DNA from: Octopus sinensis | Lineage: Eukaryota | Direction of reading: 5' to 3' | Assembly: GCF_006345805.1 (NCBI RefSeq) | Contig: NC_042997.1 | Coordinates: 88,226,001-88,290,000, forward strand | Length of the DNA stretch: 64,000 nt | Shown here: in pieces, positions 7,919 through 59,512 of the stretch | How positions within the stretch are numbered: position 1 is the first letter of the stretch | Layout of the letters: every line of letters begins with the position of its first letter | The notes under the pieces: generated by a model | Seen by the model: only the letters and a program-made list of their open reading frames with translations | Told to the model about the DNA's origin: nothing | The model's database searches: none | Position numbers and translations under genes: made by a program

Positions 7919-8064
7919 TCAGCTAAGAATGTAGATCTAACAGATCCATCCAACTCAACAAAAGTCATTGATGCTATCAAACAACTTTTAAGTAATAAAT
8001 TTCTAAGAGCAGGTACTGTTCTCGCTGAAATTTATAACATAGACAACCCTATATCAGTGACAAG
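7919..8064 (+). CDS. Speculative upstream exon (48 open codons, phase 2 donor compatible with exon 29921)
   Basis: TTTAG|TCA ... ACAAG|GTAACT with an open frame SAKNVDLTDPSNSTKVIDAIKQLLSNKFLRAGTVLAEIYNIDNPISVT(R). The pyrimidine tract is weak and I recognise no homology. Confidence 0.2.
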
Positions 8065-8811: not shown

Positions 8812-8990
8812 TTGATCATCATCATCATCATTGTCATCATGCCCATGTTCCGTACCGGCATGAGTTAGACATCTTGAAAATGGACCCAATGAGTCCAAGG
8901 ACTGCATCATGCTCCAGTGTCTGCTTTGGCATGGTTTCTACAGCTGGGTGCCCTTCCTAATGCCAACCACTTTCAGGGTATACTGGGTAT
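8812..8990 (-). mobile_element. RTE 3'-end / RTE-tailed SINE fragment
   Basis: (CAT)n tail followed by the reverse complement of GAGTGGTTGGCATTAGGAAGGGCACCCAGCTGTAGAAACCATGCCAAA, also seen at 59370-59410. Confidence 0.7.
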
Positions 8991-9939: not shown

Positions 9940-10140
9940 CAAGCTTTAGCATGTCAGAAAAATTCCGTTGCAACATTTCTTCTGATTTTATATTCTGAGT
10001 TCAAATATTGTTAAGGTCAACTTTTCCTTTCATTCATTTGGGGTCAAAAAACGAAGTACCAATCAGGTACTAGGGTCAATGAAATTGACTAACACCTGCC
10101 CACTACAATTGCTGGCCTTGTGCCAAACTTTGAAGCAATT
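9940..10140 (+). mobile_element. tRNA-derived SINE family A (further copies at about 1-40, 8995-9110, 9335-9470, 10175-10310, 41476-41600, 54720-54830)
   Basis: B-box-like CTGAGTTCAAAT, body GTCAACTTTTCCTTTCATT..GGGGTC..AAGTACCA and 3' end GCTGGCCTTGTGCCAAA..GAA..ATTATT recur across the listed copies. Confidence 0.75.
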
Positions 10141-11928
10141 ATTATCGTATTTATTGTTAGTGTTAATATTATTTGCTGAGGTCAGCTTTGCTTTACAGCC
10201 TTCTGGTATTGATAAAATAAAGTACTACTCAAGAGTTAAAGATTACTATAAACCATCCACCTTATTTTCATGTCTTTGCCAGTCTAAGAAAACATTATTA
10301 TTATGGCCTTGAGTTGAGTTCTAATTGTTTGGTTTCATTCGATGATGATGATTCCTAGTAATATAATCTGCTAATTCCCTTATGAGTTTTTCTTAAACTG
10401 CACTTAATGCTTCATAGGTTAGAAAATAGAGGTTTTCATTTTTTTTTTCGCTTTTTTTTTCTTTGTAGGAATATGAAAATGACATTGCAAGAATGTGCTA
10501 GCAAAAGGCGTCAAGCAATCAAAAAACACATATATACATGCATGCACATGCACAGAGAAAACACATTTTTTCATATGAGTAGAAGTTATATGTTTTATAT
10601 TGTTTTCCTTTGTTGATAATTGTTGACATATGCACAGTACACATGCACACACACACACAAACAATTATATATGCACAAATATATACATTTTATTTTCATA
10701 GTTTCTAGGTAGTGTCTGTACATACCTTAACCAGTATCAACCATTTCTTAAATTTTACTTTGATCTGTCTCCCTTTTCTTTTGTATTTATCTTCAACAAG
10801 GAATATACAAACTATCAGTTTATTTTTAACTTCATTTCTTGTATCATTGTACTGCACATGCTGTTCCACATTCATATGTGGTATAAACACATTATATTAT
10901 GTAGAATACTGCAGTATTTCCTTGTGCAGGTGTGTCCTCAACTCTTTGTCTGTTACTTGCTGTACTCATATACTTAAATATTGATGGTATCTGCTGTATT
11001 TCTGCATACATGTAAAGCTATTACAATGGTTACCTTGATGTGCTTCTAAATGAACATACATATACATACATGTGCTGCTTAACCAGAATATTTATTTACC
11101 TTTGTCAAATGTGTTTATGTTTGTGCAACAGAGCTCAGGTTTATGTATATGTGTATATCTGTTTGTTGGTATAGATATATATGTTGTCTGCTTGTATTCA
11201 TAGGTGTAGGCAGGCAGGCAGGCAGGCTGGCTGGCTGGCTGGCTGGCAGATGTGTATGACATGTGAGAGTATGCATGTGTGTGTTTAATATTACTATTTC
11301 AACATACATGTGTGTAATATTAATATTTTTGTATGTATATGTGATTGTATAACTGCTAATATAGTAATCATATAGACATATGTTTGAATTTAAATAAAAG
11401 TACATGCAAGTCATTCTCCAAATACATCAAATACAACTACAATTTTATATATCACAGCAAGCTGATATAGCACTATTATTACAGCATGCATGGTAAAAAT
11501 AAATAAAACCAAATATTCATATCTACATAACAATATATTCTTCTTTTGGAAGAACTACCATCATTTAGTATTAGTACCAGTAAAGTCTCTGTTTTCTCAT
11601 GCAAACAGGCATTTGAACCTTAATGAGTATGCTTTGTCATTTTATCAAATCTCAGAAAACATCTGTCTACTGAGTTATTATATTTTGTAGGAGAAAGCAC
11701 TATATATTCTGTGGAAGCTAGCCATTTTCCAAATACATGTATCAAAGTTCATTTACTTTCAGTAGTTTTTAATACTTGAATACAATCTTCAAAGGCTGTT
11801 ATCTTCCTCTTTCTTTGATTAGATTTAGGGACTCTTCTTATAAGATGGCTTATATAGCTTTAATTTCATTATTCTAAATACTTTTAAATGTAGAAATTCT
11901 ATTATTACATTATATCTGAATAAAACTC

Positions 11929-18454: not shown

Positions 18455-19736
18455 CGAGGGGCGTTCAATAAGTAATGTCCCTGACCCACTTCCCATAGCA
18501 GTAGAGCAACGAAACTTGGCACAGTTATTAGTATTTTTCTACATAGGAACCACCCAGAGTTACGCATTTCTCCCATTGTTTGATGCAGCTCTGAAGACCG
18601 TTTTTGTAGAAGACACCAGCTTGGTCCTCCAACCACGACGTAACTTCAGAAATCAAGGCTGCATCATCTGGGAAACGCTTTCCTTTCAAAAACAATTTCA
18701 TGGCTGGGAAGACGTGAAAATCAGAGGGTGCAAGATCAGGAGAGTAGGGGGATGGGGGAAGAGTTCATAGCCGCAAGCCTGTGCTTCTGATCTGGCGACA
18801 TGCGAGTTGTGAACCGGAGCGTTGTCCTGCAAGAGGAGGATGCCTTTGTTGATCTTGCCCCGCCTCTTGATTTTGATAGCTTCTCTTAATTTCCTCAAAA
18901 GTGAAGCATAATAGGCTCCTGTAATTGTGGCACCCTTTGCCAGGAAATCTGTCATCACTACTCCGTCCTGGTCCCAGAAGACTGTGAGCATGACCTTGCC
19001 AGCAGCGGGCTGCACCCTTGCCTTTTTTGGAGGAGGTGAGTCACGGTGTGTCCACTGCATTGACTGGGCTTTGGTCTCTGGATCATAGTGATGGACCCAG
19101 GTCTCATCCTGTGTAATCAGTCTTTTGAAAAATTTTTACTCATATTCTTGGCACATCTCCAAATTCATCCTTGAGCAATCGATGCGTTCTTGCTTCTGGA
19201 AAGATGTGAGCAGCCTGGGAATCCATCTGGCAGACACCTTTTGCATATGCAAATGGTCATGAATGATAGTTTCCACAGACCCAGTACTAATCTTGACCTC
19301 ATGGGCTATTTGGCGAATAGTTATGCGTTGATCTTCCGAAATGGTAGCCTCAACTTGACGACAGATGCTTCATCAATGGCAGAAGGGGGCGACCAGATCT
19401 GGGAGCTGTTTCCACAGAGTTCCGACCGTGTTTGAATTCACGATGCCAGCGTTTTACAAGGTCATATGATGGGGCATCATCACCATAAGTTACTTTCATT
19501 TCATCAAAAGTCTCCCGTGGTGTGTGTCCTTTCAAATACAAAAACTGGATTACTGCTCGACACTCAACAGGCTCCATTTCACACTTGACTCAGTTCAAAC
19601 ACCTGTAAATCAGAAACCACAATTAGTTTAGAGCTGTAATTTGCCACTTAATCTATAAATAATTGCACATGCAAAATTTCAGCTAGATCAAATAAGTGCA
19701 AGTGGGCCAGGGGCATTACTTATTGAACGCCCCTCG
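18455..19736 (-). mobile_element. Full-length mariner (DD34D) DNA transposon, 1282 bp, with TA target duplication
   Basis: TA at 18453-54 and 19737-38. The TIRs CGAGGGGCGTTCAATAAGTAATG(T/C)CCCTG(A/G)CCCACTT match at 35 of 37 positions. Confidence 0.97.
18528..19577 (-). pseudogene. Disrupted mariner transposase
   Basis: Motifs MEPVECRAVIQFL.., SGRP, WIPRLL, ITQDETWVHHYDPE, LLQDNAPVH and HPPYSPDLAPSD (D34D spacing after frameshift correction). Disruptions are single-base losses near 19355-19385, an in-frame TAA near 19138 and a frameshift near 18735. Confidence 0.93.
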
Positions 19737-20203
19737 TATCATTAAACCACACATTGCCAGTTATCCCAGTTCTTTAATATCTCCTCTGTAAGGTTCATTT
19801 ATGTTTCATCGTTTAATGTCCATTTTTCATGCTGGGATGGGTTAGACTAAATGTAGATGATGGTAGCACCATTGAGAGAGTGACAGGAAACAATGAACTG
19901 CAGTGATGGTGGTAGAGCTAGTAAAAGATAGTTAAGGAAAGCTGAAAGTGACTGGGTGAGAGGATATAAATGTGGAAAGAAGTAGAAAAAGAAGAATATT
20001 GGGAAAGATATGGGTAGCAGTGATGAAGGAAAAAATGAGGGCAAGCAGGTTAATGAGGGAGTTAGTAGAAGATAAGACCAACTTTTGCTTTAGCTGAGAA
20101 AATGACCTTAAAACACTTTGCTGTTGTGGTTGTTGTTGTGTGTTTGTTTATGCATTGCCAGATATAATATTATATATATATAATATAGTTAATATATTAG
20201 ATA

Positions 20204-20242
<39 letters not shown>

Positions 20243-20429
20243 ACACACACGTCTTAGAGATAGCATTTTGGCACATATATACCATTTACAGAGACCATAT
20301 TAGTATGAGTAGGTATATAATTATGATTTCTAAAAACACACACTGTCTTAGAGATAGCATTTTGGCACATATATACCATTTACAGAGACCATATTAGTAT
20401 GAGTATGTATATAATTATGATTTCTGAAA
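20243..20429. repeat. Two-copy 94-bp tandem duplication
   Basis: GTCTTAGAGATAGCATTTTGGCACATATATACCATTTACAGAGACC occurs at 20251 and 20345; the copies are near-identical. Confidence 0.95.
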
Positions 20430-20907
20430 AATGTGCTCTATACATATATGTAAGTAGAAATAATGACTCATTAAAAAGTATATTTATAATATTCTCTCTT
20501 CTCTATAAGAATCATGATTATGTTATATTTAGTATCATCATCATATAACGTCTATTGTCCATGCTGGCATGGGTTGGACGGTTTGACCATGTCTTAAAAA
20601 AAAGGTGGTGAAGAGTGATTTGGAATGTTGCATCTTGAAGTACACATAAAACTATAAATATTAGAATATCAGTATTGGGGTGAAAACCCCTTTTGGATAG
20701 AAAAAGTCAAAGGCTGCCTTTGAATTTTTCTGTCCAAAAAGGTTTTCAAACAATATTTACATGCTACTGCCTATAGCTTTACGTGTGCTTTAAAATCCAA
20801 TGTTAAATAAAAAAAAAAAAAACAACAATTATTTCACATTCTCTTAAAAGTTTAAAATTAGTAATCTTAAATCCATACAGAAGCTCATGCAGAAACTCCA
20901 GCCAGGA

Positions 20908-21046
20908 TAATGATTTTTAATTTAGGTACAAGGCCAGCAATTTTTGAAAGGAGAGGGACTAGTAAGTTACACTGCCTCCTTCACCTTCCCAATTCTTAAC
21001 TGGTACATTATTTTATCAACCACAGCGGGATGAAAAACAAAGTTGT
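20908..21046 (-). mobile_element. SINE family A copy (3' part)
   Basis: TTTAGGTACAAGGCCAGCAATTTT..AACTGGTAC..TTTTATCAACC is the reverse complement of the family A 3' end. Confidence 0.65.
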
Positions 21047-21241
21047 CTTATGTGGGGTTTATGCATATATGCAAAACTGATGCACATCCTCCAAATCCAG
21101 TTTATTAGTGGAACAGTGAAAATTTCTAAGACATTCCAAAGATTCTCCATCTGAGATTCTTTTAATGAAAATATGCATACACTTAGTTTTGTGCATCTAC
21201 AAGGACACACATCTGCAAGTAATGATGCACACACACACACA

Positions 21242-21293
<52 letters not shown>

Positions 21294-21869
21294 AAGACAC
21301 AAGCACTAAAGAGACATTCGCAACGAACATAAATGCAAGTGCATGCACCTACATATGTGCACATATCAACCCAACCACTTTTTGAAAACTCTGGAAAATT
21401 TGTTTACTCAAAAAGTCTTGTTGCTTTGTTAGAAACCAGTTTGAACTACATTAAGAAGTTAAATCTTAAAGAAAATCATGAACATGCATGCATACTTATA
21501 TGCATTCAGAATGAGAGAGAGAGAGGCAGACAGACAGATGTGTGTGTTTGCATAATTCTTAATGATGTGAACATTTTACTTAAAAGTCTCTTTTTGATTT
21601 ATTAATTAGTTGAAAGAAAAATACTTAAATATTTAATCTTAATGTACTTTTAAGGCACTACATTAATCACCAACGTTGATTAAATACCACTAAACAAAGA
21701 AAATGATTTCTTCAATCTTCTGCAACATCAGTATAAAGAAAAGTCAAGTGAAGTGTATTTATCACATATTCAACATCGATTTTGACCTTCATATCTAGTA
21801 TAAACCTAAGTACGACTTAATATAAACCAATAAAATACATTCGTTTTTTTTACTTTATTTTTTTTAATT

Positions 21870-22345
21870 TATATATCTATTAATATATAATATATATATA
21901 TATATATATTTATATTAAATATATATATAAATACTATATAATCATATCAATATCTATATTAATCATATATATATATTATATAATATATATTTAATATATA
22001 TATATATATATTTATATATATTATATATCTAATATTTTATATATAATATATATATAATATAATATATATATAATATATTTATATATATTATATATATTCT
22101 ATAATATATATTTATTATTAATATATATATATATATGAGATATATATATATATATTTATATATATATATAATATATATTATATATATTTTATATATATAT
22201 ATATATTTATATATTATATATATTTATAATATATCATATATATATATATATATATTTAAGATATATATATATATATATCAGTTAATATAGATATATATAT
22301 TTATAGATATATACTATTTATATATTATATATATATGAATATAAA

Positions 22346-22389
<44 letters not shown>

Positions 22390-22498
22390 ATATATTATAT
22401 ATTTTATATCTATATTATAATAATATTTTATATATCATTTATTCATATATAATTTATATATATATAATAATTATATATTCTATATATATATTTCTATA

Positions 22499-22536
<38 letters not shown>

Positions 22537-22616
22537 TATTTTATATATATTATATATTTATATATTATAATATTATATTATATATATATTATATATATAT
22601 ATAAGATATATCTATA

Positions 22617-22682
<66 letters not shown>

Positions 22683-22705
22683 ATATATAATTATATATAT
22701 ATATT

Positions 22706-22748
<43 letters not shown>

Positions 22749-22897
22749 ATATAATATATATTTATATATATATATATATATAAGATATATATTATATATA
22801 ATATATATAGATAATTTATTATATATTATATATATATATATATAGTATATATATATATATATATAGATATTATATAATATTTTATTATATATAGATA

Positions 22898-22936
<39 letters not shown>

Positions 22937-24100
22937 CTATATATATAGATATAATATATTATATATTATATATCTATATATATCTAATATAATATATATA
23001 TATTTTATATATATATTTATATATATTTATATATTTTATATATATTTATATAATTTATATATTTTATATTATTTATATATTTATAATTATATATATTTAT
23101 ATAATTTTATATATATATATATATTATATATATCTATATATTTATATATATACTTTATATATAATTTATATATTTATATATATTTATTATATAATTTATA
23201 TATATAATATATATATATATATATTATTTATATATATATATATATATTATATATTTATATATATTATCTATATATTATTATATATTTATATATATATTTA
23301 TATAATATATATATATATATATATATATTAAATTATATTTTATATATATATTTTATATATATTTATATTTATATAATATATAATATATATTTATTTTATA
23401 TATATATTTATCTATATATTATCTATATATTTTTATATATATATTTATATATATATATTTATATAATAATATTTATATATATATATATTTATATAGATAT
23501 TTATATATATTATATATTATATATATTTTATATATTTATTATTTTGATATATATATATATATTTATATATTTTATATATATATATATATTTATTATATTT
23601 ATCTATATATATATTTATATATATATATATTATTATATATTTATAATATATTTATATATATTTATATATATATATATATTTTTATATATATATATCTATT
23701 TATATATATATATATATTTATATATCTTTATTATAATTATAAATATCTATTTATATATATATATATATATATTATTATATATATTATATTTATATATATA
23801 TATATATTATATCTATTATATATATATATATATTTATATATATTTTATATATATATATAGATTTATATATATATATATATATTTTAATATATATTTATTA
23901 TATATATATATTTATATATATATTATATATATATTTATATATATATATATAATTTAATATATTATATATATATATATATATTTATATATAATATATATTT
24001 ATATATATTTATATATATATAATATATTTATATATATTTCTATATCTATTTATATATATATAATATATATAATATTTTTATATATAAATATATCTATATA
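21870..24100. repeat. Very large degenerate (TA)n array (~2.2 kb)
   Basis: Almost pure A/T with only scattered C/G. Confidence 0.98.
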
Positions 24101-24193
24101 TAGAAGGAGCTTCTACAGGACTAGAACTGTTTCATTCAAGATGATTTCTCTTGAATGAAACAGTTCTAGTCCTGTAGAAGCTCCTTCTATATA
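24097..24193. repeat. Perfect 45-bp inverted repeat with 7-nt loop
   Basis: 24097-24141 TATATAGAAGGAGCTTCTACAGGACTAGAACTGTTTCATTCAAGA is the exact reverse complement of 24149-24193; the loop is TGATTTC. Confidence 0.98.
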
Positions 24194-24311: not shown

Positions 24312-24404
24312 ATCATACACAGTTTTATGAGTGGAATTCTTAATATTGTAAAAGGAGGAAAGGGGGAGTTAAAAAATTATGAACATTATTAGTACAGGTA
24401 TGGC

Positions 24405-24890
24405 TGTCTGGTAAAGAAGTTTGTTTTTAGCTAGTATAATCCCAGGTTCAGTCTCCCTGTGCAGCATATTGGGCAAGTGTCTCTCAATCCCAGGTTCAGT
24501 CTCCCTGTGCAGCATATTGGGCAAGTGTCTTCTCTCTTGCTCTCAGAGGAACAAAGATTTGTAAATGAAATTTGACAATTTGACAGTAAAAAATTTTGTG
24601 AAAGTCTGTGTATGTGTGTGTTTATTGTTTGCAAATGTCTTAGCAAAGAAATTCTGCTGTTTGCGTATAATACAAGCATGGGATGCCAAGTGCTTATGAA
24701 AATACCTTTTGATATTTCAATCCATGTATGTTACTTCTTTTACAGTCAGATTACTTTATCTTTCTTCCACAAAAATCAAATAAGTGTCAGAGAAATTACT
24801 GGCATTACTATAAGTGTTTAACACTCTTGAAACATGGTGTCTTAGCATGGCCACAGCCCAGTAACAGAAACCAATGAAAGAATATTTATT
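24405..24890 (+). mobile_element. Family B SINE with internal 48-bp tandem duplication (24438-24533)
   Basis: Head GGTATGGCTGTCTGGTAAAGAAG (A-box-like), AATCCCAGGTTCAGTCTCCCTGTGCAGCATATTGGGCAAGTGTCT twice, and 3' end GGTGTCTTAGCATGGCCACAG..GAAAC. Confidence 0.75.
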
Positions 24891-32070: not shown

Positions 32071-35000
32071 TTAATGAAGCCTATATTTCTTAAAGTTATT
32101 ACTTAGATGGAAGAGGAAACAATGCCTATCTTTTCAACTTCTCCCAGGCTAAGGTAGTTCATATTCATCGAAGAGAGACAATTTAGGTAGTGAGCATTTC
32201 AGAGTGTTAAGCTTGATTTACCCAATTATTTAGTGTGGGCTTTGGATAATAAGATGCAGTTAGTATGATATGAGGAGGAGAGTCAGGTAAACTTGGGAAG
32301 AGGTATTACATAGCTTTTTACAGAGAAGCAAAAAAACTGTTGAAGTAGCAATAGATGAGAAAGAAGAAGAAACAGTGCACCAGTATATTAGTGGTTGTCA
32401 CATGCTGGCATATGAACTGCAGATCAACTGAATAGGCTTCTTTTCTTTTTTTTAGTCTGTTTCTTTTTTTGCAATTTTGTAATTAGTCTAAGATGTTGTT
32501 TAGGCTCAAATCAGCCTACATTGCCTGAGCCTATTACAAAAAGCATCTTCATCTGTTTTGAATGTCTGAGATTATATTATCTAGAGTGTCTTTCTTGTTT
32601 AAGATTTAAAGAATATTTGATTTTTGATTTGAAGGACTTGATAATGCTATTCAGTTTGAAAGATATTTGGTTCCTATTTCTAGTAAATTGAACAATCTCA
32701 TAGGGGCTCTCTCAATGGCTCATACAGAATCTCAGACAGTTGTTTGTGTAGAAGTAGTAGCAGTGCTAACTATTTAAGCAATCTTGTAACATGAACTATA
32801 CTTAAATTTTACTGAAGCAGCAGCTGATTAGAGTTGAAGTATATTTTAGTTCTAAAGATGAGAAGCAGATGGTACCTATAAGCAAATAACTTTGTTAGAT
32901 TAGTTTTGTACCAGTTACAATTAAAAGTTGATGTTGAGTGTAATGACATTCTGTTCTAGAAAGTCATTAATCACTAGAATGTAATGTAGAAGAGCAGATC
33001 TCTAGTGGATCTAACTCTATGGAAATTACTAAAGGTTATTGAAAAGAGACAGTGCCTCAATATGATAAAAGAAGTGGTGATTTGATGCTAGCTCAGAAGC
33101 ACAGTTTGAAAATAATTGCAATAACACCATCAATACTGGTCACCTTGTTATATTATAGTAACCAGAGAAGTTTCCTTGGCAATTCTATGCATGTTGTAAT
33201 GAAGGAGGTTGGATAGAAAAGCAAATCAAGAACAGTTTTGTTGTGTGAATGCAGTGTAGAATTGGAGGCAGAGTATGCAAAAAATATAGTTGCTTTATCA
33301 AATGGATCTCATTGTAGGTGAGATAGTTATGAAGATTCAGCAAAGTTATGAGAATGCATGACATATAATGTACAAAGGGATCCTTTTGAACACTGGTTCC
33401 ACTTGGGGACAATAAGAAACTTACTCTAGATGTACATTTTCATATGAACCATTGGGATTGTGAGGAACATGAAGGAACTTATTGAGAAGGGTAGCCAGCC
33501 ATTCACTTGACCATCTTGACTGAGTCAAAGGGAAGAATACCTGGTGTTAATGGTGATCAGGATAGAATTTGCACCGTCTTAACTAGTTAGCTGTCTTAAA
33601 GTACTACAGGGCTGAAAGAGTAGGGGAGGGGTTTTGTGGAGTGATGTGCTCTTTTTAAGCAGTGATCAAATAAATTTAATAAATGCAAATTCTGATGACA
33701 GGTAAAAAACTGGGTTTAGATGTTAAAAAGAGGTAAAGTTTGTTTAATTAATCTTTAAACTACTACTACTACTATCACAAGCCCTATACAGGAGCTACAA
33801 TTCTACTCCTGTAGTTACTACTACTACTAGTCTAATAGCTGGTGGATGTATTAGAATATTCATATGATCAAATCTCAAGCTTATTGATATGATGAAACTG
33901 CAATTATTTCTTTACTGTGTTGACGTTACTGCTGCCACTGCTGTTGTTACTACTACTACTGCTGCTGCTGCTGTCATTTTGCTCTCACGTAGTCAGAAAA
34001 AGTAAATTATTGCTTATTGCAAATGTCTGAAAGCTGACTGTTTTAACATTTCAGCTCTATTTAGATTCCATTCAGATTATTGCATATTAAATACCAAAAG
34101 AAAAAAAAGAAAAAAACAAGAATTATTTATGCCTCATGCTTAGACTCATTTGAATGATTTCTTCTCTACAGCAATCTTTTGTAAAAGGCTTCTCTGTTAA
34201 AGATAAGAAAAGAGTAATAACCAATAGTATTTAAATGTCTGCATAGGTGCGATTGTCAAGTGCTTATGTGCACATGTGTGTTCTTGTCGATACTAGCATT
34301 TAAAGATTAGTTTTTAAATGTTTAAATGCTGAATATAGTTTAAAAACACACAAGCACACAATATAGAGAGTTGTAGATGGCTGATTTAATAGGATTCTGA
34401 AAATCTATAAAGTATGAAGAGTTTGTAGTTGTCACTGGTGCTGCACTGTACCCTTTGTCTGGCAATAATATACTGTGTCTAGTTCACCTGATTGTAAGTG
34501 GTACTACAAAGAAATGTAGCTGAAAACCAAAACTAGGGAAAGCACTAAACTTGATGAATGTTTCATTGGCTTGTATTCTTGAGTTCAACTACATCCACAA
34601 ATATGGTTAGAAGAAGCATTGTTTCCAAAATTACCTCACCTATATAACTGGGCAGACATAGCTATCTAGTTAAGCCTTTTTTTTTTGCTTAATATCCATG
34701 TAGTTCAAAGTTTGATCCCACTTTGTGGTACTTTGGTAAAATATCTTCCACTACCACAGTCTTAAGTTGACCAAACCTTGTGAGTTATATAGGGAAGATG
34801 AAAACTATTTGGAAATTTATTGTGATTTTAAGTTCTACTCCACTTCTTGATACCTTGGGCAAGTGTCTTTTATTCTAGCCTCACCTTGACAAATGCGTTG
34901 TCAATGAAATTTGTAGATGGAAACTGTATGGAAGCTTATATATATATATATATAAATGTCTGTTGATTTGCCAAGAAGCAATAAATTACAGAACTCAATA

Positions 35001-35644: not shown

Positions 35645-37454
35645 TATGTATATAAGCAGCACATGCAAAAGCAACACATACAAAAGTGATTGTTTCAAGC
35701 TCACATTTTTCAATCCATTTCTGGCTCTCTTGATACTTCCAACGTATTAAGCTTCATACAAACAAGTCACTCTTGTAACTTGCCTCATGAAATTGCATTG
35801 TTGTCTAAGTAATATTTTTAAAATAATGGATGAGTGTACATGCATTTGTATGTATGTGTTCACTGTATGTGCATCTGTATATGCACATATATACAACACA
35901 CTCATGAACCCATATATGCATATGTATAAGCATATATACTCATATACATATACAAGTACATATACTTATATACACATATTTTTTTAAAGTTTATCTCTAC
36001 AGATTTTCTGTACAATTGAGAGCCAACAATGTAAGTTATGATGTTATGTCTATGAATATATTTATGTAACAAGGTGATCAAAAATAGAAAAATTGGTAAT
36101 AGGTGTGTATGCAATTAATAATTAACATACATTTATACACACACACACACACACACATACATTTACATATGTTAATTGAACATTTCAAAACCAACACACA
36201 AACACTATAAATGTCCTTGATCTCTTTCTCATCTCAGAACCTAACTCCACTCAAACCATCATCAACTCTGCACTTATGAAATTGTGTGATTTCAACATTA
36301 TCACAACTACTCACCATATACCTGCATATGACACAAAACCCTCTAACTTCTCAGATTTTAAGTTAGCATGTAATACTTGGAGTAAATCACCTATCTATTA
36401 ATACTGTCTGACTGAACTTTAACCAAAGCTACAATTCCTACAAGGTCATCATCCAAACTGTGAATGATACTTTTGCGTTTCACACTGTGTAGACTAACTA
36501 TCTAGTCTCCCAAATTGCAGTTAATCATTTTGACACCTTACCACAAGGATCTCTACCAATTTTGTGGAATCTTCTTAGCTTTCACTCCTCAACCATGAGG
36601 GTTCTGTAAGCAGTACTCCTAGGAAGGAAACTTTCACATTCCCTGTTTGCTTTACAACCCATTCTCCATGGCATATATTAGATGAATCTCTCCAAAACTT
36701 TTGATTTCTACTCCGCCAGCCTCAACACCATTTAAATATATATATAAAGTTTGAAAACACTTTTACTTGTATTTGACCAACAAGGCCACCAGCTTTAACA
36801 ATGTCCTTGCCATTACCCTCAAACATTAAATGATAGAACTACAACATAGCCTCACCAAATTCTCAAGTCTCAGTTTCTCTCCTTTTCTTTTTCTCTCTCT
36901 CACTACCCCCTTTCCACTTTGGTTTTATTCCCTACATCCTTCTTTCAGTATATATCAATTACCTACTTACCATCACTTCCAACAACACTCAGTCTTGTGC
37001 ACATGAATCCCCTCCTTCACTGTTCATTAATTTTGTGAACCTTAACATCATCCACATGTAACTTAGATATCCATGCCAAAATTGTTCCGACTCCATGAAC
37101 AAAGAGCACAAAAACATTCTCTGAAGGGATCATGGCATTCTTGTCTCCCTCAATAACAAAATGACATAATCAGTGTACATATCAATAAAAAATTGCATCA
37201 GCTCCCCAAACATGAATAGCACACAACTAGAGCCCTCAACATTGCTACAAATACGGACCTCATCATCACTGAGCAGCTCTCCTAAAGAGTGCATACTTAA
37301 TAATATAACAAAGACTGCATCCTAAAGACTTGGAAATAATTCAGTCTTCATCAACCATTCAACCACTAACCCTCTAAATGCCCAAGTGAAACCCATAATA
37401 GTGTATTTTATAAAAAAAAATTTACTTAATAGTTAAGGGCAATACCCATGATCA

Positions 37455-37612: not shown

Positions 37613-40600
37613 TACACACACACACACACAGACATCATTAACTGCATACAAAAGAAAGACATGAAGTCACTCACCAACATTCTTCATCATCTGGCCCACA
37701 AACATTGTTGTCTTCTCTCACTAATGTTTCTGTTACTACTATAGTGGCTTCTGCTCCTTGGAGACTAGTGGGAGGAGGAATTAAAGTGTTCCCAAAGCAG
37801 AGAATTGATCCAGATGCTTTTAACAGAATGGACTTGTACCATCTTCACTCATCTCTTCTGTCATCACCCATATTTTCCTGCAACCATCAATTTGCTAGTG
37901 TTCAAGAACAATGTTAACTGCTTCAGTTTCGCCAATTTTGGAGAGCCAGCAATGGCTATAAATTTAATTTCTTCTAACAGAATGATGAAATTTTTGTTAA
38001 AAATTAAAATTTACAGAAATTCCAAGTTATGTAAGTTTGGATTTATTGATAATGTAAAATTGAAAAGTCAGTTATATCTAATGAAAACAGGAAGATTGAT
38101 ACTACAACAATTTGTGTCTCACAATCATGCCTAATTAGTGTCACATTCATTTGGCATTTGAGAGTTTAGTGCTATAAGTCTAAAGGGATACAGTTATATC
38201 AGAATTTAGGAGCAAGCATAGCTGTATAGTTTAAAAAAGTTACTTTGCAACCACATAACTCTGCTATCAATCCTTTTGACTTGCAACTTGGAAAACCAAT
38301 ACTGTATAGTGAGATTTAGTAGACAGAAATGTGCTAAAAGACACTGTGTGTGTGTTTGTGTGTGTGTGTATGCATGCACATGTGTGTGTATGCATGCACA
38401 TGTGGGTGCATGCACTTGTATATGTGTGTGCATGCATGTGTTTGTAAAGAATAACCAATAAATCAATGCATTGAACACCTTGTAGTATATATTCTTTTTA
38501 AGTTACATCCATTTGCACAGAAGGAGGATTTAGCCACTCAATAAATAGATATTGATAAATTAAATACCAGACAAAGTATTGGGGTCAACCTAATCAACTA
38601 AAATGCTTGTAGGTGATGCCCTAACATGGACACAGCCTAAAGTCAGAAACATTAGAATAATGAAGGAGTGTCATGTACATTAAATACACTTTCACACTTT
38701 GAACTGTTTGGTTATCATTCTTTAGTGTTTCAAATATTGTTAGCTTGTTAGCCTTTGTTAAATCTACATTTGCGACTATACAATTTGGTCTATTATCTAA
38801 AAGTTGTATCATTATGCTACCTTTGTAAATCACGTTACAGGTTGCTTTAAGAGCCTTCAGGTAAACCAGCAGTAAATTCTGAAACCAACAATTTCATTGT
38901 TATTCATGTAACTGAATATCTTTTACATATCTCTAATATGCTATAACAAGATAAATAGCCACATGTTTTAGCACGCTAATAGATGACAATATTATGTGTT
39001 GTGTGCTTGATGATGATTAGTGCATGTTGTTGTTTTTTTAAGATTTTGGGGGAACAACCAACCAAATGTTGATGTACTATTGACTAATCATATTTCAATA
39101 TGTTTGCAAATATTTCAGCTTATATACTGTCATACTGTTTCCTTTATTTCAATTATTTGAACAATTGAAAATGTGAAACTAAAAGTTATGAGTCAAGAAG
39201 TTTTAACTTTTTATAAAATACAGCTTAATGTATATAGTTATGTTATAAATATTAAGATACTTCTATACACTGAACTTTTTTTAGTTGTTGTTTGCATTGT
39301 TGTCACTGCCGCTATAGTTGTTTAGCTCTATGTTGGCTCTGCTAAAGCAGACATGTGATCAAAGGCATTTCAGTTGTGACAATCCCATCTTTTTCCCAGG
39401 CACTATGCACTGAGACCTCACTATCCAATGTGTTTCTTTCTAATACAGTAGGTGTGATTAGAAGATATTTGGTTGCTATTACTACCAGCTCTAACAACAT
39501 TCAGTTTAGCAAGCCACTGGAGTTCATATCTTGTCACTAGTGGTGTGCATATGAATGTGACAAGATTTAAACCATCATCTTTTCTGCCAGTAGGAAGTTA
39601 ACATATTAACTCGTCTAGCTAGTATTTTAATCGCTCTTAAATCCAAATCAAATTTATCAGTAGTGTATCAATAAATTGTTTTGTATCAAAGACTCTATCA
39701 AATAGTAATTTTTCTTGTAAGATATACAACAATGAATGACTATAAGTGTGGTTATTCTTTGAATTCATGAAATAAATCAAAACATTTACTTGGCTTCACC
39801 TGATCAGAAGTATGTTATCAATAGATGACCAGCCCTAATGATTTTTTTTAAATGTTTGTAACTCCTGAGTTTTCAAAGTACTCATCTATCTAAAAACTTA
39901 TCAGACTTTGACATTATTAAGTTTTCTTAGTCTTGTTCTTAATTATTTATTCAATATTTTTGGAGGCCCACCCAGGTAGGTAATATTGATGCAGTTGTTG
40001 ATCCACTTGATATACTAAAACTTAAATGCTCCTGCATTGGATAATGCATGAGGAATTCAAAGTTGTCTTGCAGGATTGGTCAACAGCTACCCTCTGTGCA
40101 TCATTTCATTATAGGTTTACCAGGTCCCTGTTGATTGTCTGATTCCAATTCATCTTGGGTTAGGGTTAGGGTTCCTTGTGCAGTTGCCCTTAAAGGTTCT
40201 ACTTAAGGACTTGATTGGTGAGTCTGTTTGTCAGGAGTGTTACATGTCCTCAGTTGGCACTTGCAGATAGTGATGGTCATTGGGTGTTTTTCTTATGATT
40301 TCATTGCTAATGAAGTTGTTTTATTTGATACACAGTATTTTTTAAAATTCATTGTTGAAATTGTTCCTCTAGAACTGGTGATTGTGCAGGAAACATGGGT
40401 TATCTGAGAAGGATGTAACTCAAGGCAAAAAGAGATTAGGCAAAGTATTAAGTGCTGGATCTGGATATAAGGCACTTGAAGTATAATGAAACTTGCTGGA
40501 CATGGGCAAGGACAGAGGTGGTGTACAGCTTGCTAATTCAGAAGTGCAGAAGCTGTTATTGCAGTAGTATCAGGACAGGATGAGAACCAGTATCTTCATA

Positions 40601-42845: not shown

Positions 42846-43164
42846 AATACTTGCTGTGGATTTGGAACTCATAAACCCTGAGTTAATTAATGAATTGTAG
42901 GGACACTATATTTTGTTATGCAAACCAAAGTATATCAAACACTTTTATATGTCAAAACTGTGTTCTACTGTATTAGCAATGCCATTAAATCAATTGTTAA
43001 GGTTATCTCTTGTTCATAACAAATCAGTGCTGGCTATAATTTGTATAGAAAATCTATAAAGAAAGATAGCCTTAATACCTGAGTTAATTGTCAAATACCA
43101 TATATATAGTCTTTTCGCCTCTGCTTTATGTGTTTAATTTAAGGCTAAAATGCAGTTTCTGTGC

Positions 43165-43940
43165 ATTCCATTTGGTCAGAAGTTTAACATTTGAAATTGA
43201 AGCAGGTGTTCTGCAGGGTGACACACTCACTCCTTTTTTATTCATCATTGTTCTTGACTATGTTCTACATATTTTCCTAGATGGTATGGAAGAAAAGGGA
43301 CTCTTTTTGAAACCCCACCAGAGCAGTCAGCATTGTGCACAATATTTAACTGATCTTGACTTTGCTGACAATCTTGCCTTGATATCCCATTGTATTAAAG
43401 ATGCAGAATCTTTGTTACAAGCACTGGAGAAAGCAACAGACCAGGTTGGCCTTTACTGCAATGAGAGTAAGACAGATTTGATCACAACCTCTTCCAAGTT
43501 AACTGAACTTAAATCACCCAATAATATATCAATCAAAAACGTTGATGACTTTAAATATCTTGGATCACACATAGCAGACTCCCAAAAGGACTTTAACATC
43601 CACAAAGCTCTTGCTTGGGATGCATGTAACAGACTTGATAAGATCTGGCACTCAAACCTTCCCCCCACATTAAAAGTTAAATATCTAAAACACTGACTGA
43701 GCCGGTCCTTCTCTATGGATCGGAGACCTGGATCTTATTGGCTCTCTTAGAAAAACAACTAGGTGAAACATAGCAGCCTGCTTCTCCAGGAAACTGACAT
43801 TTCCAGATACCATATCTTGAGACTCAAGGCTGGATATTAGAGATCTGAACACAACAATGCAGGACCGTGTAGTGTGGAAAGGGATTGTCAATGGAGTTCT
43901 GATCAACCATAGGTTGGTTGAAGGATGATGAAGATGAACA
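43165..43940 (+). pseudogene. 5'-truncated RTE-clade LINE RT fragment (second RTE family)
   Basis: Open frame GVLQGDTLTPFLFIIVLDYVL..LTDLDFADNLAL..GLYCNESKT..DFKYLGSHI..RLDKIW. The catalytic FADD reads FADN, the 3' part is internally deleted, and the element ends in a GATGATGAAGATG tail. Confidence 0.9.
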
Positions 43941-49649: not shown

Positions 49650-50180
49650 AAATACAAAGACACACACACATAGATGTATATGTATGTATATATACAACAG
49701 GCTCCTTTCAGTTTCCACGTACCAAATCTATTCACAAGGCTTTGGTCAGCCCAAAGCTATAATAGAAGACACTTGCCTAGGGTGCCACACAGTAGGACTG
49801 AACCTGGAACCATACGGTTGGAAAGCAAGCTTCTTTTCTGTTATGGACCCAGATTTTCCAAGGCCGCCAAGAGCACACCAGATGCCACCCAAGATGCAGC
49901 ACTCTACAGGCACCATATCCGTATCTCCGGACAAGCCGATTCCACAGATGCGGTCCTTTACGAAGAGAGAACTCTTCCCGGGGATCCCAGCAACGTCTCC
50001 AGGCTTACTTGCATTGCTGCTGCTTCACCCAGCCACCGGCTTCGACAACAGATGCGCTGCTAGGAGCACGCTGCATTCCCACCACTGGACAAGTACTCTT
50101 TGAGTTTGGGTTCAGGAATATTAACCCAATTCCCTTTCAATGCAAGGCCATTTCTTACCACACAACCATGCCTGCACCTA
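49650..50180 (-). mobile_element. Family B SINE 5' half, interrupted by a 28S rRNA fragment
   Basis: The minus strand reads TAGGTGCAGGCATGGTTGTGTGGT-AAGAA-[316 bp]-AAGAA-GCTTGCTTTCCAACCGTATGGTTCCAGGTTCAGTCCTACTGTGTGGCACCCTAGGCAAGTGTCTTCT. Removing the insert restores a contiguous SINE head. Confidence 0.88.
49836..50151 (-). pseudogene. 28S (LSU) rRNA pseudogene fragment, D7 region, with CpG decay
   Basis: The minus strand contains TGAAAGGGAATTGGGTTAATATTCCTGAACC (28S CGAAAGGGAATCGGGTTAATATTCCCGAACC), CCCCGGGAAGAGTTCTCT, GGAATCGGCTTGTCCGGAGATA and GCATCTGGTGTGCTC..GGCCTTGGAAAATCTGGG (28S GCGTCCGGTGAGCTC..GCCCTTGAAAATCCGGG). Confidence 0.93.
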
Positions 50181-52439
50181 ACCTTTAAATTAATTTCAGA
50201 ACTGTAGGACAGTCAGGCCTAAACATGAGAAGAGATAATCAATGACTAAAAATACTGATTAAATGTTGCCAGTCAATCCAAATTGATATGTTGAAAATTT
50301 TATATCTGGTTTCCTACTCATATAGATTTCTCAAATACAGTTAACTTTATTAACAGCTGACTGCCTCAGGATATTGGTGGGGATTTTTGTATGACAATCA
50401 TGCTATGATTGTGGTGTGAAATCATGCAGTTGTGTGTGGTGTAGAGTCTGTGTCATAATTCAACCAAACTATTAGCTGATGCAGACTACATCTAGCTTCC
50501 TCTGATTTTGCTGTTTGACCATGCTTTATAGCACTGTTTCACTGAGAAATTCCTATTGTGTAGGATACAGTATGGTTTTGAGAACAATTTATGGATACTA
50601 CTCTATCACAAGTCATATGGTGCATCTATTTTGCTGACCAATATTTCTTTATATTATTAAAGTTTCCTGTAATTTTTGCAGCAGAGAAGAGAAAGGTGCA
50701 TATTTGTAATTTTGTTGAATTTGCTGCAGGCTTTTTGGCAGTAAGCCTAATGTAACTACCAATGCTATGCTATGCACTTGTTTGTTTCTGTAATCATATG
50801 TTTATTTGTGTTTGTGTATGCGTGTGTGCACATGTGTGTGTGTGTGTGTCCCTTTAGTCATTCATGACAATTGCTCCAATGGTAATGGGAAGGTCAAATA
50901 GAATATCTAAATATTTTTCTTTAGGAAAATAAATTAAAATTTGGCGAACATAATTGGATAGATAAGAAGATATTTTAAGTGAGGTGGATTTGATGTGAGA
51001 AGAGATCAAGTAGAAAAACTGGTAATATGATATGGATGGGTGATGGCAGATGTGGTAGTTGAAGGCTGTGGTGGGTGTTGTTGTTTGTAAGTGTAGTAAT
51101 ATTGATGGTAGAAATATAATGGGAATGGTGATGGTGGTGATAAAGTTGGTATTGATCACAGTGGTGGGGTTGTGGTGGACAGTGTATTGGTAGTGGAGGT
51201 ATCTGGGTTTGATGATGGTGATGTAGAGTATATGATAAAGAGGTGTTGGTGATTGGTGGATAGAGAAAGAAATAGGTGAGGGTTGGAAATGGTGTAGTAA
51301 GGAGAACAAATCTGTAGTAAAACTAGTACACACACACACAAGAAATTTTTAATTCTACCATTTATGTAGTTTAAAACCTCAAGACACCAAACAGGAAGTT
51401 ACAAGTAAAATTGGTGCCATTAAAAACACTTCCCTCCTGATCCAACTTTGTATTTAGTTACCTTTGTAGTTTTGAGTGCTTTCTAGTAACATTGCTTGAT
51501 TCTGTTATTTGTTATTCTTGTGGAGGGAAAATTCTTCAATTTTCAGACAATTGCTAGCTTAAAAGAAATCAATACTTCTGTAGCTGCTACGACTGCTGCA
51601 CTCTTGTACATTGATGGTTATCAGCTGATTCATGATATGTCACTGTTACTTCGATCTTACAACTACTAGTTATTTATTTACCTGTTATTCTGAAAACTTA
51701 GTCTTTTTAGATTTTTTCGTATTTGGTCACTGCTGTTTCTGTTGATATAATTATATATAAAGGCCTGTGGTTGTGATCCCTTAACTACTAGATTGTTAAT
51801 AGTTACACAGGCATGTAGAGAGATTTACGAATGAACAGAGAGAAAGATTGATAGATAGAGAGATAAACAGACAGACAAGACCTATAAACTGCTCTTAAAT
51901 GATCAATTGTCTAATCCCTAAATGGCTCTACTTAAGCAGGCCTGTGGCTAATTTCGTGCTGTGCCATAGATATTTGTTCAATATCTGTTTACCAATGTTA
52001 CTCAAGAAATATTATCAAAATTATAGTCAAAGATATGTAGACATTTTCAAGTCAGCAGCAGTAGTAGCAGTCAGCTATTAGTGCTAATACTTAAAGCTGG
52101 TCAGACAGACAGATGGATGTATGAATGAATGAATGAATTGATGGACAGCTGGTTAGTAAATGAATTGAATGGATAGAGAGATAAAATTATAGACGGACGG
52201 ATATATATTATGTTTAATGGTTTAGATAGACAAGATAGACAAACTAATAGGCAGTTATTGTGTTGTCTGTCACTGAATAAAAGTCTTTAGCTGCTAGATA
52301 TCAAATAATGCTTATTAATCCTCTACACAATAAAATTTTGAGTTTTTTTTTTACCTAGTAAGTTCCCAAGGTAGTGAATCTGTGTCAGAGATAGCAACTT
52401 GTTTGTAAAACTTTGCTGTTCCCAGTAGAGCCAATAAAG

Positions 52440-57961: not shown

Positions 57962-59512
57962 AGAGTTAGTCTAGATGAGATGCAATTTGGTTTTGTGCCA
58001 GGTAGAAGCACCACTGATGTTATGTTTCTGGTAAGGCAACTGCAGGGGAAATACGTAGCCAAAGATAAACTCTGTATTTGGCTTTTGTTGACTTGGAGAA
58101 AGCCTTTGACAGCCCCCGCCCCCGCAATCCCTTATCTGGTGGTCAATGAGGAAACTAGGGATAGACAAGTGGTTAGTGAGAGCCATACAAGCCTTGTACT
58201 TGGAAGCTACCAGTAAGGTGAAGGTGGACAATGAGTACAGCAGAGAACTCAGGGTACAAGTAGGGATTCACCTAAGATTGGTGCTCAACTCCTTGTTCAT
58301 CATAGTCCTCCAGGCAATAACAGAGCAATTTAAGACAGGCTGCCCCTGGAAGCTCCTCTATGCTGATGACCTTTCTCATATAGCTGAATCACTACTTAAA
58401 CTAAAGAAGTTCCAGGTATGGAAGCAAGGTCTAGAATCGAAGGGCCTTAGAATTAACCTAGCAAAAACCAAAGTCATAGTAAGTAAGAAGGCAGACAAAT
58501 CACAAATCCCTTCAGGTAGATGGCCTAGCTCAATCTGTAGAAAAGGAGTTGGTAGAAACTCCATAAGATGCACCTGGTGTAAGCTTTGGACACATAATAG
58601 GTGCAGCAACATCAGAGGAAAGTTAACAGGGAAACTAACTTTTGTATGTGGAAGGTGCACAGGTACAGTAAATGCTAAAAATGTGCAGAAAATGGACTCC
58701 ATCAACTACTAGGAGGAACAAGCTAGTGGTAGTAAATAGCTTCCGTTATCTAGGTGACCAAGTTAGTAGTGGAGGTGGATGCTCCAAGAGCATAGCTGTG
58801 AGAATAAGATCAGGCTGGGCAAAGTTCAGAGAGCTTCTACCCCTGCTGGCAACAAAGGGCCTCGCTCTCAAAGTGAAAGGCAGATTGTTTGGTGCCTGTA
58901 TGCAAACAGCTATGCCCCATGACAATGAAACTTGGACTATGACAGTGGAGGGCATACATAGGCTTGAACGAAATGAAGCCAGTATGTTTCGCTAAATGTG
59001 CAATGTCAGTGTGCATGTTCGACAGAGTGTAAGCATCTTGAGAGAAAAGTTAGGCATAAGAGAAATCAGATGTGATGTGCAAGAGATGACTATGCTGGTA
59101 TGGTCATGTAATGTATATGAATGAGGAAAACTGCGTAAAGAATGCTGGCCTCTAACTGTGGAAGGAACCTGTGATAGAGATAGACCCAGGAAGACATGGG
59201 ATGGTGAAGCATAGTCTTTGAACTTTGAGCCTCACAGAGGCACTGACTGGTGACCAAGCCGAGCAAAATCACAGTTGTGATAGATACCGGTGGCATGTAA
59301 ATGCACCCTGGTGTCATGCAAATGGCACCCGTGCTAGTGGCACAAAATCACCCATTACACTCTTGAAGTGGTTGGCATTAGGAAGGGCATCCAGCCATAG
59401 AAAACCAAGTCAAATCAGACTGGAGTCTGGTGCAGCCTTCCAGCGTGCCAGCCCAGTCAAACCATCCAACTCATGCCTACATGGACAACGGATGCTAAAT
59501 CATGATGATGAT
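57962..59512 (+). pseudogene. 5'-truncated RTE LINE: RT domain to 3' tail, frameshifted
   Basis: QFGFVPGRSTTD, DLEKAFD, LRKLGIDKWLVRA, CPWKLLYADDL, GLRINLAKTKV, SFRYLGDQVSSGGGC, RLERNEASM and an ATGATGATG tail at about 59500. Confidence 0.93.

What the first reader, a model, noticed from the sequence alone, without database searches (positions are those of the whole stretch)
49831..50156. Retroposed 28S rRNA fragment starting next to the hidden break, inserted into a SINE with a 5-bp TSD
Seen: a 316-bp 28S piece (49836-50151, minus strand) flanked by TTCTT (49831-35 and 50152-56) splits an otherwise contiguous SINE head just after its A-box-like motif. Its 5' end is only about 12 nt upstream of the decayed CGAAAGGGAATCGGGTT motif, and many differences are CG->TG/CA. 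Known: in most protostomes the 28S rRNA is cut at a hidden break in D7a, just upstream of that conserved motif, creating 28S-beta. Inference: a LINE RT primed internally on mature 28S-beta and copied to its natural 5' end, so the insertion would be a genomic fossil recording the break position. The CpG decay implies later methylation.
Basis: partly seen in the sequence, partly recalled or inferred. Interest (0 to 1): 0.75.

Follow-up and report, generated by a model that had tools for sequence, protein, structure and literature searches.

The report
Old 28S rRNA retrocopy inside a SINE
A decayed piece of about 316 bases of large-subunit ribosomal RNA sits inside a tRNA-derived SINE, flanked by a 5-base duplication; it is an ordinary kind of rRNA retro-pseudogene, and the appealing idea that its start records the 28S "hidden break" fits the region but cannot be shown from this one copy.

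Summary
On the minus strand, 49845-50150 is a 28S rRNA fragment (Rfam LSU 92 bits, E 4.5e-22; 73-74% identical to cuttlefish and other decapodiform 28S). It starts 11 nt upstream of a decayed CGAAAGGGAATCGGGTT and ends at the next variable region. One extra A (50151) and nine unassigned A-rich bases (49836-49844) complete the insert. AAGAA flanks it on both sides.

With the insert and one AAGAA removed, the flanks form a continuous tRNA-like SINE head. That head aligns straight through the junction with a related SINE copy at 24388-24488.

CpG decay is real. Of 41 CpGs invariant in three cephalopod references, 27 are TG or CA in the fragment. CpG o/e is 0.57 in the fragment, about 1.4 in the source gene and 0.16 in the window.

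The most likely origin is a tailless, RT-mediated retrocopy made by LINE machinery acting in trans.

The hidden-break reading is only partly supported. The 5' end lies inside the published break interval, at the 3' edge of the D7a loop in the Rfam model. In decapodiform folds, however, that point is the base of a GC-rich stem, where an RT would stall anyway. I could not obtain an octopus 28S or any mapped 28S-beta end. This is a new member of a known kind, of modest interest.

The parts
50157..50178 (-). 5' part of the tRNA-derived SINE head (GGTGCAGGCATGGTTGTGTGGT), including the A-box-like TGGTTGTGTGG
   Evidence: Sequence. The joined flanks fold as a tRNA-like cloverleaf. The region aligns to the related SINE copy at 24388-24488.
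50152..50156 (-). Target-site duplication copy, AAGAA in insert orientation (TTCTT on the + strand), on the 5' side of the insert
   Evidence: The related SINE copy has a single AAGAAG at this place.
50151..50151 (-). One extra A at the 5' junction. It matches neither the SINE nor the cephalopod 28S references (which have C there). It may be an untemplated addition or an octopod-specific base.
   Evidence: Multiple alignment.
49845..50150 (-). 28S rRNA-derived segment of 306 nt. It runs from the 3' edge of expansion segment D7a (TGGCCTTGCAT, then the decayed CGAAAGGGAATCGGGTT) to ...GGAAAATCTGGGTCC, and is heavily CpG-decayed.
   Evidence: Rfam RF02543, 92 bits. blastn to L001 and L002. CpG statistics.
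49836..49844 (-). Nine A-rich bases (ATAACAGAA) at the 3' end of the insert, of unresolved origin. They could be octopod-specific 28S variable sequence, filler, or an A-rich tail on the template RNA.
   Evidence: No alignment to the three references, which read GGTTTTCGCAGC here. The motif is not repeated in the window beyond chance.
49831..49835 (-). Second target-site duplication copy, AAGAA (TTCTT on the + strand), on the 3' side of the insert
49655..49830 (-). Rest of the SINE: GCTTGCTTTCC..., the B-box-like GGTTCCAGGTTCAGTCC (49811-49795), the body, and a TA/CA/TG microsatellite tail

Best explanation
This is an old, RNA-mediated (reverse-transcriptase-made) copy of an internal stretch of 28S rRNA.

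Proposed steps:
1. A LINE-type endonuclease or other staggered nick opened the D-loop region of a resident tRNA-derived SINE at GT|AAGAA.
2. The T-rich 3' end (..TTCTT) primed on an A-rich patch of 28S rRNA at the start of the variable region that follows ..GGAAAAUCUGGGUCC. There was no poly(A) tail.
3. cDNA synthesis ran about 306-315 nt upstream and ended at the 3' edge of expansion segment D7a.
4. One extra base was added, and the gap was sealed with a 5-bp target-site duplication.
5. The copy then decayed in a region of long-standing CpG methylation.

What is shown: the 28S identity, the insertion into a once-continuous SINE, the duplication and the CpG decay.

What is inferred: an RNA rather than DNA intermediate, a LINE enzyme as the agent, and priming at an A-rich patch.

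Why the 5' end is at D7a is open. It may be run-off at the 28S-beta end created by the hidden break, or a stop at the D7a stem.
For: - 28S identity.
- A clean empty site and a 5-bp duplication positioned independently by the SINE alignment.
- Both insert ends coincide with the edges of variable, surface-exposed rRNA segments rather than arbitrary core positions (Rfam alignment; alignment). This is what RNA-level accessibility or cleavage would give.
- The 3' end is A-rich (6 of 9 bases), and the duplicated target is AAGAA preceded by T on the sense strand. This resembles the T-rich/A nick sites of APE-type LINE endonucleases (sequence; the family property is from established knowledge).
- Reverse-transcriptase relics lie in the same window: RVT_1 at 43088-43693, and more weakly at 58146-58709.
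- 28S rRNA pseudogenes and 28S/LINE-1 chimeras made by TPRT are documented in primates (bioRxiv 10.1101/2025.02.02.635956).
- Post-insertion decay: of 41 conserved CpGs, 9 remain CG, 19 are TG and 8 are CA, against 34 mismatches at 200 conserved non-CpG sites. CpG o/e is 0.57 in the fragment, 1.35-1.4 in the source genes and 0.16 in the window.
Against: - There is no poly(A) tail and no LINE-derived sequence.
- A 5-bp duplication is short for L1-type TPRT, and fill-in of a staggered double-strand break would also produce one.
- The second AAGAA could be 28S sequence (microhomology) rather than duplicated target. That cannot be told without the species' 28S.
- This is a single copy, so no recurrence can be shown.
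- The organism's own 28S was not available, so neither insert boundary is known to the base.
Confidence: 0.62

Rival explanations
1. The template was mature 28S-beta, and the RT ran off its natural 5' end, so base 50150/50151 records the hidden-break position.
For: - The 5' end is inside the published break interval, 11-12 nt upstream of the 3' marker CGAAAGGGAAUCGGGUU (PMC6925239; sequence).
- In the pan-eukaryote Rfam model the first 28S bases fall in the last positions of the terminal D7a loop, just before its 3' stem strand. That is the loop where breaks are reported (PMC2048585).
- Reported beta 5' ends lie a short distance upstream of CGAAAGGG (PMC4671170).
- One extra untemplated-looking base at the 5' junction fits RT run-off (RT end-addition is established knowledge).
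- Molluscs and cephalopods are reported to carry the break (PMC10755191). The octopus preprint draws the protostome gap as conserved (PMC13321053).
Against: - There is no mapped 28S-beta end for any cephalopod in what I could read.
- In cuttlefish and other decapodiform 28S the homologous base sits in the 3' strand at the base of a conserved GC-rich D7a stem (..GAGCGGCCGGCC..), 10-20 nt inside where a loop cut would leave the end.
- The chance that a 5' end falls in this interval is not negligible, roughly 0.03-0.07 by my estimate.
- The case was picked out after the fact.
- There is one copy only, and no other 28S pieces in the window.
Confidence: 0.3
2. Retrocopy as above, but the 5' end is unrelated to the break. 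The RT stalled at the stable D7a helix (intramolecular, or the alpha:beta duplex), or the copy is an ordinary 5'-truncated insertion.
For: - Predicted D7a folds of both references put the homologous position at the foot of a long stem (-34 and -57.5 kcal/mol for the segments folded).
- 5' truncation is the rule for LINE-made copies (established knowledge).
- Recurrent internal start points of 28S pieces unrelated to any hidden break are seen in primates, for example around position 3636.
Against: The exact coincidence with the core/variable boundary in the Rfam alignment is somewhat unlikely for random truncation. The strength of the octopod D7a stem is unknown.
Confidence: 0.3
3. DNA-level capture. 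A piece of rDNA (for example extrachromosomal rDNA) was ligated as filler into a staggered double-strand break by end joining, and fill-in of 5-nt overhangs made the duplication.
For: There is no poly(A), the duplication is short, there is a possible 1-nt filler at one junction and 9 unassigned bases at the other. Capture of abundant cellular DNA at breaks is established knowledge.
Against: Both ends sit at edges of RNA-exposed variable segments, which has no meaning at DNA level. The A-rich 3' end next to a T-rich nick site is the TPRT signature.
Confidence: 0.12
4. Template-switch chimera or tailed degradation fragment. The nine A-rich bases are either a very short LINE/SINE 3' tail from which the RT jumped to 28S rRNA, or a heteropolymeric A-rich tail added to an rRNA decay fragment that then served as primer-binding site.
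For: ATAACAGAA does not align to any reference 28S. Sense-oriented 28S/LINE-1 chimeras exist in primates. A-rich tailing of rRNA decay intermediates is established knowledge.
Against: Nine bases are too few to assign. The motif is not enriched in the window and differs from the TA/CA/TG tail of the host SINE. The references are themselves variable at this spot, so it may simply be octopod 28S.
Confidence: 0.1

Closest known systems
28S rRNA retropseudogenes of mammals (the LSU-rRNA repeats; the first human case lies next to a LINE-1), as summarised in bioRxiv 10.1101/2025.02.02.635956
   Same: An internal fragment of 28S rRNA a few hundred nt long, dispersed outside the rDNA, flanked by target-site duplication, and attributed to LINE machinery acting in trans.
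   Different: This one is in a mollusc (cephalopod-type) genome. It has no poly(A), only a 5-bp duplication, is nested in a tRNA-derived SINE, and starts at the D7a edge.
Tailless retropseudogenes (Schmitz, Churakov, Zischler and Brosius 2004, from my own knowledge; not checked with the tools)
   Same: A 3'-truncated copy of a non-polyadenylated RNA without an A tail, with TSDs, explained by priming of the nicked T-rich target on an internal A-rich patch.
   Different: That class was described for tRNA and other small RNAs and mRNAs in mammals with L1. Here complementarity of the 28S to the primer could not be tested.
28S rRNA/LINE-1 and tRNA-half/LINE-1 chimeric insertions (bioRxiv 10.1101/2025.02.02.635956)
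   Same: Recurrent fragment boundaries are read there as traces of RNA cleavage before reverse transcription (tRNA halves), which is the same logic as a 'fossil of the hidden break'. Their 28S pieces have a median length of 269 nt.
   Different: Those carry a LINE-1 segment on the 3' side. Here there is none, only 9 unassigned bases at most.
Protostome 28S hidden break or gap in D7a (Natsidis et al. 2019, PMC6925239; Ware et al. 1985 and Fujiwara and Ishikawa 1986 as cited)
   Same: The insert's 5' end lies between the two marker 20-mers that bracket the break, close to the 3' marker.
   Different: The break is a property of the RNA, and nothing here measures it. The exact position in octopods is unknown to me. 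Incirrate octopuses have an additional, unrelated break in H88 (PMC13321053).
Octopus tRNA-derived SINEs (Ohshima and Okada 1994, cited in PMC4824008)
   Same: The host element has A- and B-box-like motifs, a tRNA-like head and a simple-repeat tail. From memory it resembles the abundant octopus SINE.
   Different: Family assignment was not tested.

Membership tests
LINE-mediated (TPRT) retropseudogene | Sequence derived from a cellular RNA, located away from its gene | tested here: met
   Rfam LSU 92 bits. 73-74% identity to cephalopod 28S. Embedded in a SINE in AT-rich, CpG-poor DNA.
LINE-mediated (TPRT) retropseudogene | Target-site duplication flanking the insert | tested here: met
   AAGAA on both sides, single in a related SINE copy. 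Caveat: the 3' copy could be 28S-derived microhomology.
LINE-mediated (TPRT) retropseudogene | 3' poly(A) or the LINE's own 3' tail | tested here: not met
   There are only nine A-rich bases (ATAACAGAA) before the duplication. It therefore fits the tailless variant, not the classical processed pseudogene.
LINE-mediated (TPRT) retropseudogene | Endonuclease-type target (T-rich/A nick) | tested here: inconclusive
   The bottom strand reads ..TTCTT|AC. This resembles TTTT|A, but the preference of the cephalopod LINEs is unknown.
Tailless retropseudogene | Template RNA complementary to the nicked target at the internal priming site | not testable with these tools
   This needs the species' own 28S downstream of ..GGGTCC. 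The decapodiform references differ there.
LINE/28S template-switch chimera | LINE 3' segment between the 28S piece and the 3' duplication | tested here: not met
   At most 9 unassigned bases are present, and no LINE similarity.
Copy of 28S-beta ending at the hidden break | 5' end inside the marker-defined break interval | tested here: met
   It lies 11-12 nt upstream of CGAAAGGGAATCGGGTT (markers from PMC6925239). In the Rfam alignment it is at the 3' end of the D7a loop.
Copy of 28S-beta ending at the hidden break | 5' end coincides with the mapped 28S-beta 5' end of the species | not testable with these tools
   No octopod 28S or RNA-end data could be reached. In decapodiform folds the position is at the stem base, not the loop.
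Copy of 28S-beta ending at the hidden break | Independent genomic copies pile up at the same 5' base | not testable with these tools
   The window holds only this one rDNA-derived piece. No genome of the species was available.
tRNA-derived SINE (host element) | tRNA-like head with A and B boxes, body, and simple-repeat tail | tested here: met
   ARAGORN cloverleaf on the joined flanks at a relaxed threshold. B-box-like GGTTCCAGGTTCAGTCC. Related copies at 24388-24574, 2157-2334 and 34852-34963.

The most novel reading that the evidence does not exclude
The insert is a run-off cDNA of mature 28S-beta. Its first base would then mark the 5' end left by the hidden-break excision in an ancestral octopod tens of millions of years ago. 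A genome-wide census of such tailless 28S copies would show a sharp pile-up of 5' ends there, and perhaps at the octopus-specific H88 break too. Dispersed rRNA pseudogenes would then be a fossil record of rRNA fragmentation sites.
Probability: 0.25. Interest if true: 0.6.

Novelty: new member of a known kind. Interest (0 to 1): 0.38.

Why it matters
On its own this is a dead rRNA pseudogene nested in a dead SINE, with no expected function. Two things give it some value. First, it is a clean, datable example of LINE-type machinery copying a non-polyadenylated rRNA in a cephalopod-type genome, with both junctions resolved. Second, it suggests a cheap, purely genomic test: if many independent 28S copies begin at the same D7a base, dispersed rRNA pseudogenes could be used to map present and past rRNA break sites in protostomes. 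That would include asking when the octopus H88 break arose. The CpG loss, measured against a known starting sequence, also gives a local read-out of germline methylation in a genome where methylation is reported to be confined to gene bodies.

Tried and rejected
1. Whole-window Rfam scans (gathering and E-value modes) did not report the fragment at all. Only the local scan did, so the absence of other hits in those scans is weak evidence. I therefore also ran blastn with a whole cuttlefish rDNA unit against the window, which found this piece only.

2. I tried to fetch the octopus 28S through spurious ORFs called on rDNA.
   - A six-frame query found only a cuttlefish model.
   - Querying with that model found only itself.
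   - A profile of CpG-restored six-frame variants found two more cuttlefish models and one ENA contig. All are decapodiform-type (74% identity; no TATGCGTC H88 motif).

3. DNA pattern scans for a cephalopod 28S stretch and for the SINE core found nothing in JGI metagenomes or IMG/VR.

4. Exact look-ups of two window ORFs found nothing on record.

5. The supplements of Natsidis 2019 and of the octopus H88 preprint gave no cephalopod entry and no D7a sequence or mapping. Ware et al. 1985 is not held.

6. An LTR-integrase-type insertion (TG...CA ends with a 5-bp TSD) was rejected, because no register gives matching flanks.

7. A link to the 28S-specific RT-encoding insertion seen in a cuttlefish rDNA copy (L003) was rejected. 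That site is about 1 kb downstream of the fragment's region.

8. A search for ATAACAGAA-type tails elsewhere in the window gave chance level.

Full report
**What is there.** Read on the minus strand, the region is:

...GGTGCAGGCATGGTTGTGTGGT[AAGAA]A-TGGCCTTGCAT-TGAAAGGGAATTGGGTTAATATTCC ... GGAAAATCTGGGTCC-ATAACAGAA[AAGAA]GCTTGCTTTCCAACCGTATGGTTCCAGGTTCAGTCC...

- A local Rfam scan calls 49809-50209(-) eukaryotic LSU rRNA at 92 bits, E 4.5e-22, covering model positions about 1585-1822.
- The two whole-window scans missed this hit because of their speed filters.
- A blastn of a complete cuttlefish rDNA unit against the window shows that this is the only rDNA-derived piece in the 64 kb.

**References.** No octopus sequence is reachable with the collections on hand. 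By searching for spurious ORFs that gene callers place on rDNA, I recovered three cephalopod 28S sequences:
- L001, a degenerate Acanthosepion pharaonis unit.
- L003, an A. pharaonis copy.
- L002, an intact unit on an ENA contig (LSU 2257 bits).

None carries the incirrate-octopus H88 motif TATGCGTC, so all are decapodiform-type (motif from PMC13321053). The fragment is 73-74% identical to them over 312-315 nt. Homology starts at 50150 (TGGCC, which is CGGCC after C>T at a CpG) and ends at 49845 (GGGTCC). 50151 (A) matches neither the 28S nor the SINE. 49844-49836 (ATAACAGAA) falls where the references enter a variable region (GGTTTTCGCAGC...) and cannot be assigned.

**The host element and the empty site.** I removed the insert and one AAGAA and joined the flanks.
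- The joined sequence has an A-box-like TGGTTGTGTGG and a B-box-like GGTTCCAGGTTCAGTCC.
- ARAGORN at a relaxed threshold draws it as a 71-nt cloverleaf.
- It aligns straight through the junction with an independent, related SINE copy at 24388-24488: GTGTGGT-AAGAAGCTTGC against GTCTGGTAAAGAAGTTTG.

The SINE was therefore continuous, AAGAA was single, and the duplication is placed independently of the eye. From memory the element resembles the abundant tRNA-derived octopus SINE (octopus SINEs: Ohshima and Okada 1994, cited in PMC4824008). That assignment, and hence 'octopus', is a lead and not a test.

**CpG decay.**
- Of 41 CpG dinucleotides invariant in the three references and aligned to the fragment, 9 are still CG, 19 are TG, 8 are CA and 5 are other.
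- At 200 reference-invariant non-CpG sites only 34 differ, and that count includes true lineage differences.
- CpG o/e is 0.57 in the fragment, 1.35-1.4 in the homologous reference segments and 0.158 in the window. Every 4-kb bin lies at 0.09-0.44, with TG+CA in excess.
[quoted passage not shown] Methylation is concentrated in the bodies of a subset of genes and nearly absent from transposons (PMC9476566). If the host is an octopus, the decay reflects position in a methylated gene body rather than targeting of the repeat.

**Mechanism.** The anatomy is that of a tailless retrocopy. It is a fragment of a non-polyadenylated RNA, 3'-truncated, with an A-rich 3' end. It abuts a duplicated AAGAA whose bottom strand (..TTCTT|AC) looks like an APE-type LINE nick site. 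There is one extra base at the 5' junction.
- RT relics lie in the window.
- Active RTE-clade LINEs are described in octopus (PMC9115989).
- 28S pseudogenes and 28S/L1 chimeras are documented in primates.

I put an RNA-mediated, LINE-in-trans origin at about 0.6. The rivals are:
- DNA capture of rDNA at a staggered break.
- A template-switch chimera with a minimal LINE tail.
- An A-tailed rRNA decay fragment as template.
- A multi-copy composite SINE.

Both insert ends fall at edges of variable, surface-exposed segments. That favours an RNA-level origin, but one case is weak evidence.

**The hidden-break claim.** Natsidis et al. bracket the protostome break between AGUGGAGAAGGGUUCCAUGU and CGAAAGGGAAUCGGGUUUAA, about 105 nt apart in molluscs (PMC6925239). 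The insert begins 11-12 nt before the second marker.

In favour:
- In the Rfam alignment the first 28S bases occupy the last positions of the terminal D7a loop and its 3' stem strand. The SINE head is treated as the loop insertion.
- Reviews place beta 5' ends a short way upstream of CGAAAGGG.
- Reported gap sizes range from 5 to 54 nt.

So the position is compatible.

Against:
- In both decapodiform references the marker interval is expanded (135 and 199 nt) into a long hairpin.
- The base homologous to 50150 lies in the conserved GC-rich 3' strand at the foot of that hairpin (..GAGCGGCC[G/A]GCC..), not in its loop.
- An RT would be expected to stall there whether or not the RNA is broken. 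If the break is in the loop, a true run-off copy should carry 10-50 more bases.
- I found no mapped beta end for any cephalopod. The octopus H88 preprint only draws the protostome gap schematically and maps a different break.
- My rough chance estimate for a 5' end landing in the interval is 0.03-0.07, and the case was selected after the fact.

I give the run-off reading about 0.3.

**Verdict.** The object is a new member of a known kind (a dispersed rRNA retro-pseudogene). The break-fossil idea is a reasonable, cheaply testable hypothesis that this single locus cannot decide.

Noticed in passing
L003 (Acanthosepion pharaonis CAHIKZ030001019.1), reverse-complement coordinates about 7592-11379; RT gene at L003 2624-5825(-): A cuttlefish 28S copy is interrupted in the classical R2-region (..GGTAGCCAAATGCCTCGCCATCTAAT | insert | TAGCCAAATGCCTCGTCATCTAATTAGTG..) by a roughly 3.8-kb insertion. 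The insertion encodes a 1048-aa RVT_1 protein in the 28S orientation, with about 24 bp of target duplicated. It looks like an rDNA-specific non-LTR element in a cephalopod.
   Followed up: partly
L001 10001-18726 (A. pharaonis CAHIKZ030001522.1): An rDNA unit is annotated as protein-coding genes (P0001, 1132 aa, antisense to 28S, Pfam RRT15; a second 1039-aa model over the 18S region). The unit scores low for a full-length LSU (1055 bits against 2257 for L002) and its SSU is only 1421 nt. It is probably a degenerate rDNA copy inside a 540-kb contig.
   Followed up: partly
window 1-64000: The whole window is strongly CpG-depleted (o/e 0.158; 0.09-0.24 in all but one 4-kb bin) with TG+CA excess and normal GpC. 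This is vertebrate-like and unexpected for intergenic or transposon DNA if octopus methylation is confined to gene bodies. The window may lie in a long methylated gene body.
   Followed up: partly
window 24438-24530: The related SINE copy carries a perfect 48-bp internal tandem duplication (1.9 copies, 100% match) spanning its B-box region and GGGCAAGTGTCT core. It is much younger than the element itself.
   Followed up: no
window 43088-43693(+), 58146-58709(+), 18701-19060(-): Transposon relics. There are two reverse-transcriptase fragments: RVT_1 at E 9e-8, and a weaker one followed by a PHD/C1-like zinc finger. There is also a mariner-type transposase fragment (Transposase_1, E 3e-23).
   Followed up: partly
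window 20001-24000 (for example 23544-23957) and 24117-24173: An extremely AT-rich block (GC 15.8%) made of TA-type microsatellite, which reads as a 137-aa 'IYIYI' ORF. The both-strand Rfam hit to a plastid 3'UTR family next to it, and the mir-297 hits at 35846-35920 and 38346-38414, look like simple-repeat or palindrome artefacts.
   Followed up: no
window 49809-50209: Technical point: a 92-bit LSU match (gathering score 50) was not reported by either whole-window Rfam scan and appeared only when 1.4 kb was scanned alone. Short, decayed rRNA pieces can be lost to the filters.
   Followed up: yes
window 2003-2186(-): A weak SCARNA7-like Rfam match (33.5 bits, E 4e-4, below the gathering score) next to a SINE-like copy at 2157-2334. 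It is probably chance or repeat-derived.
   Followed up: no
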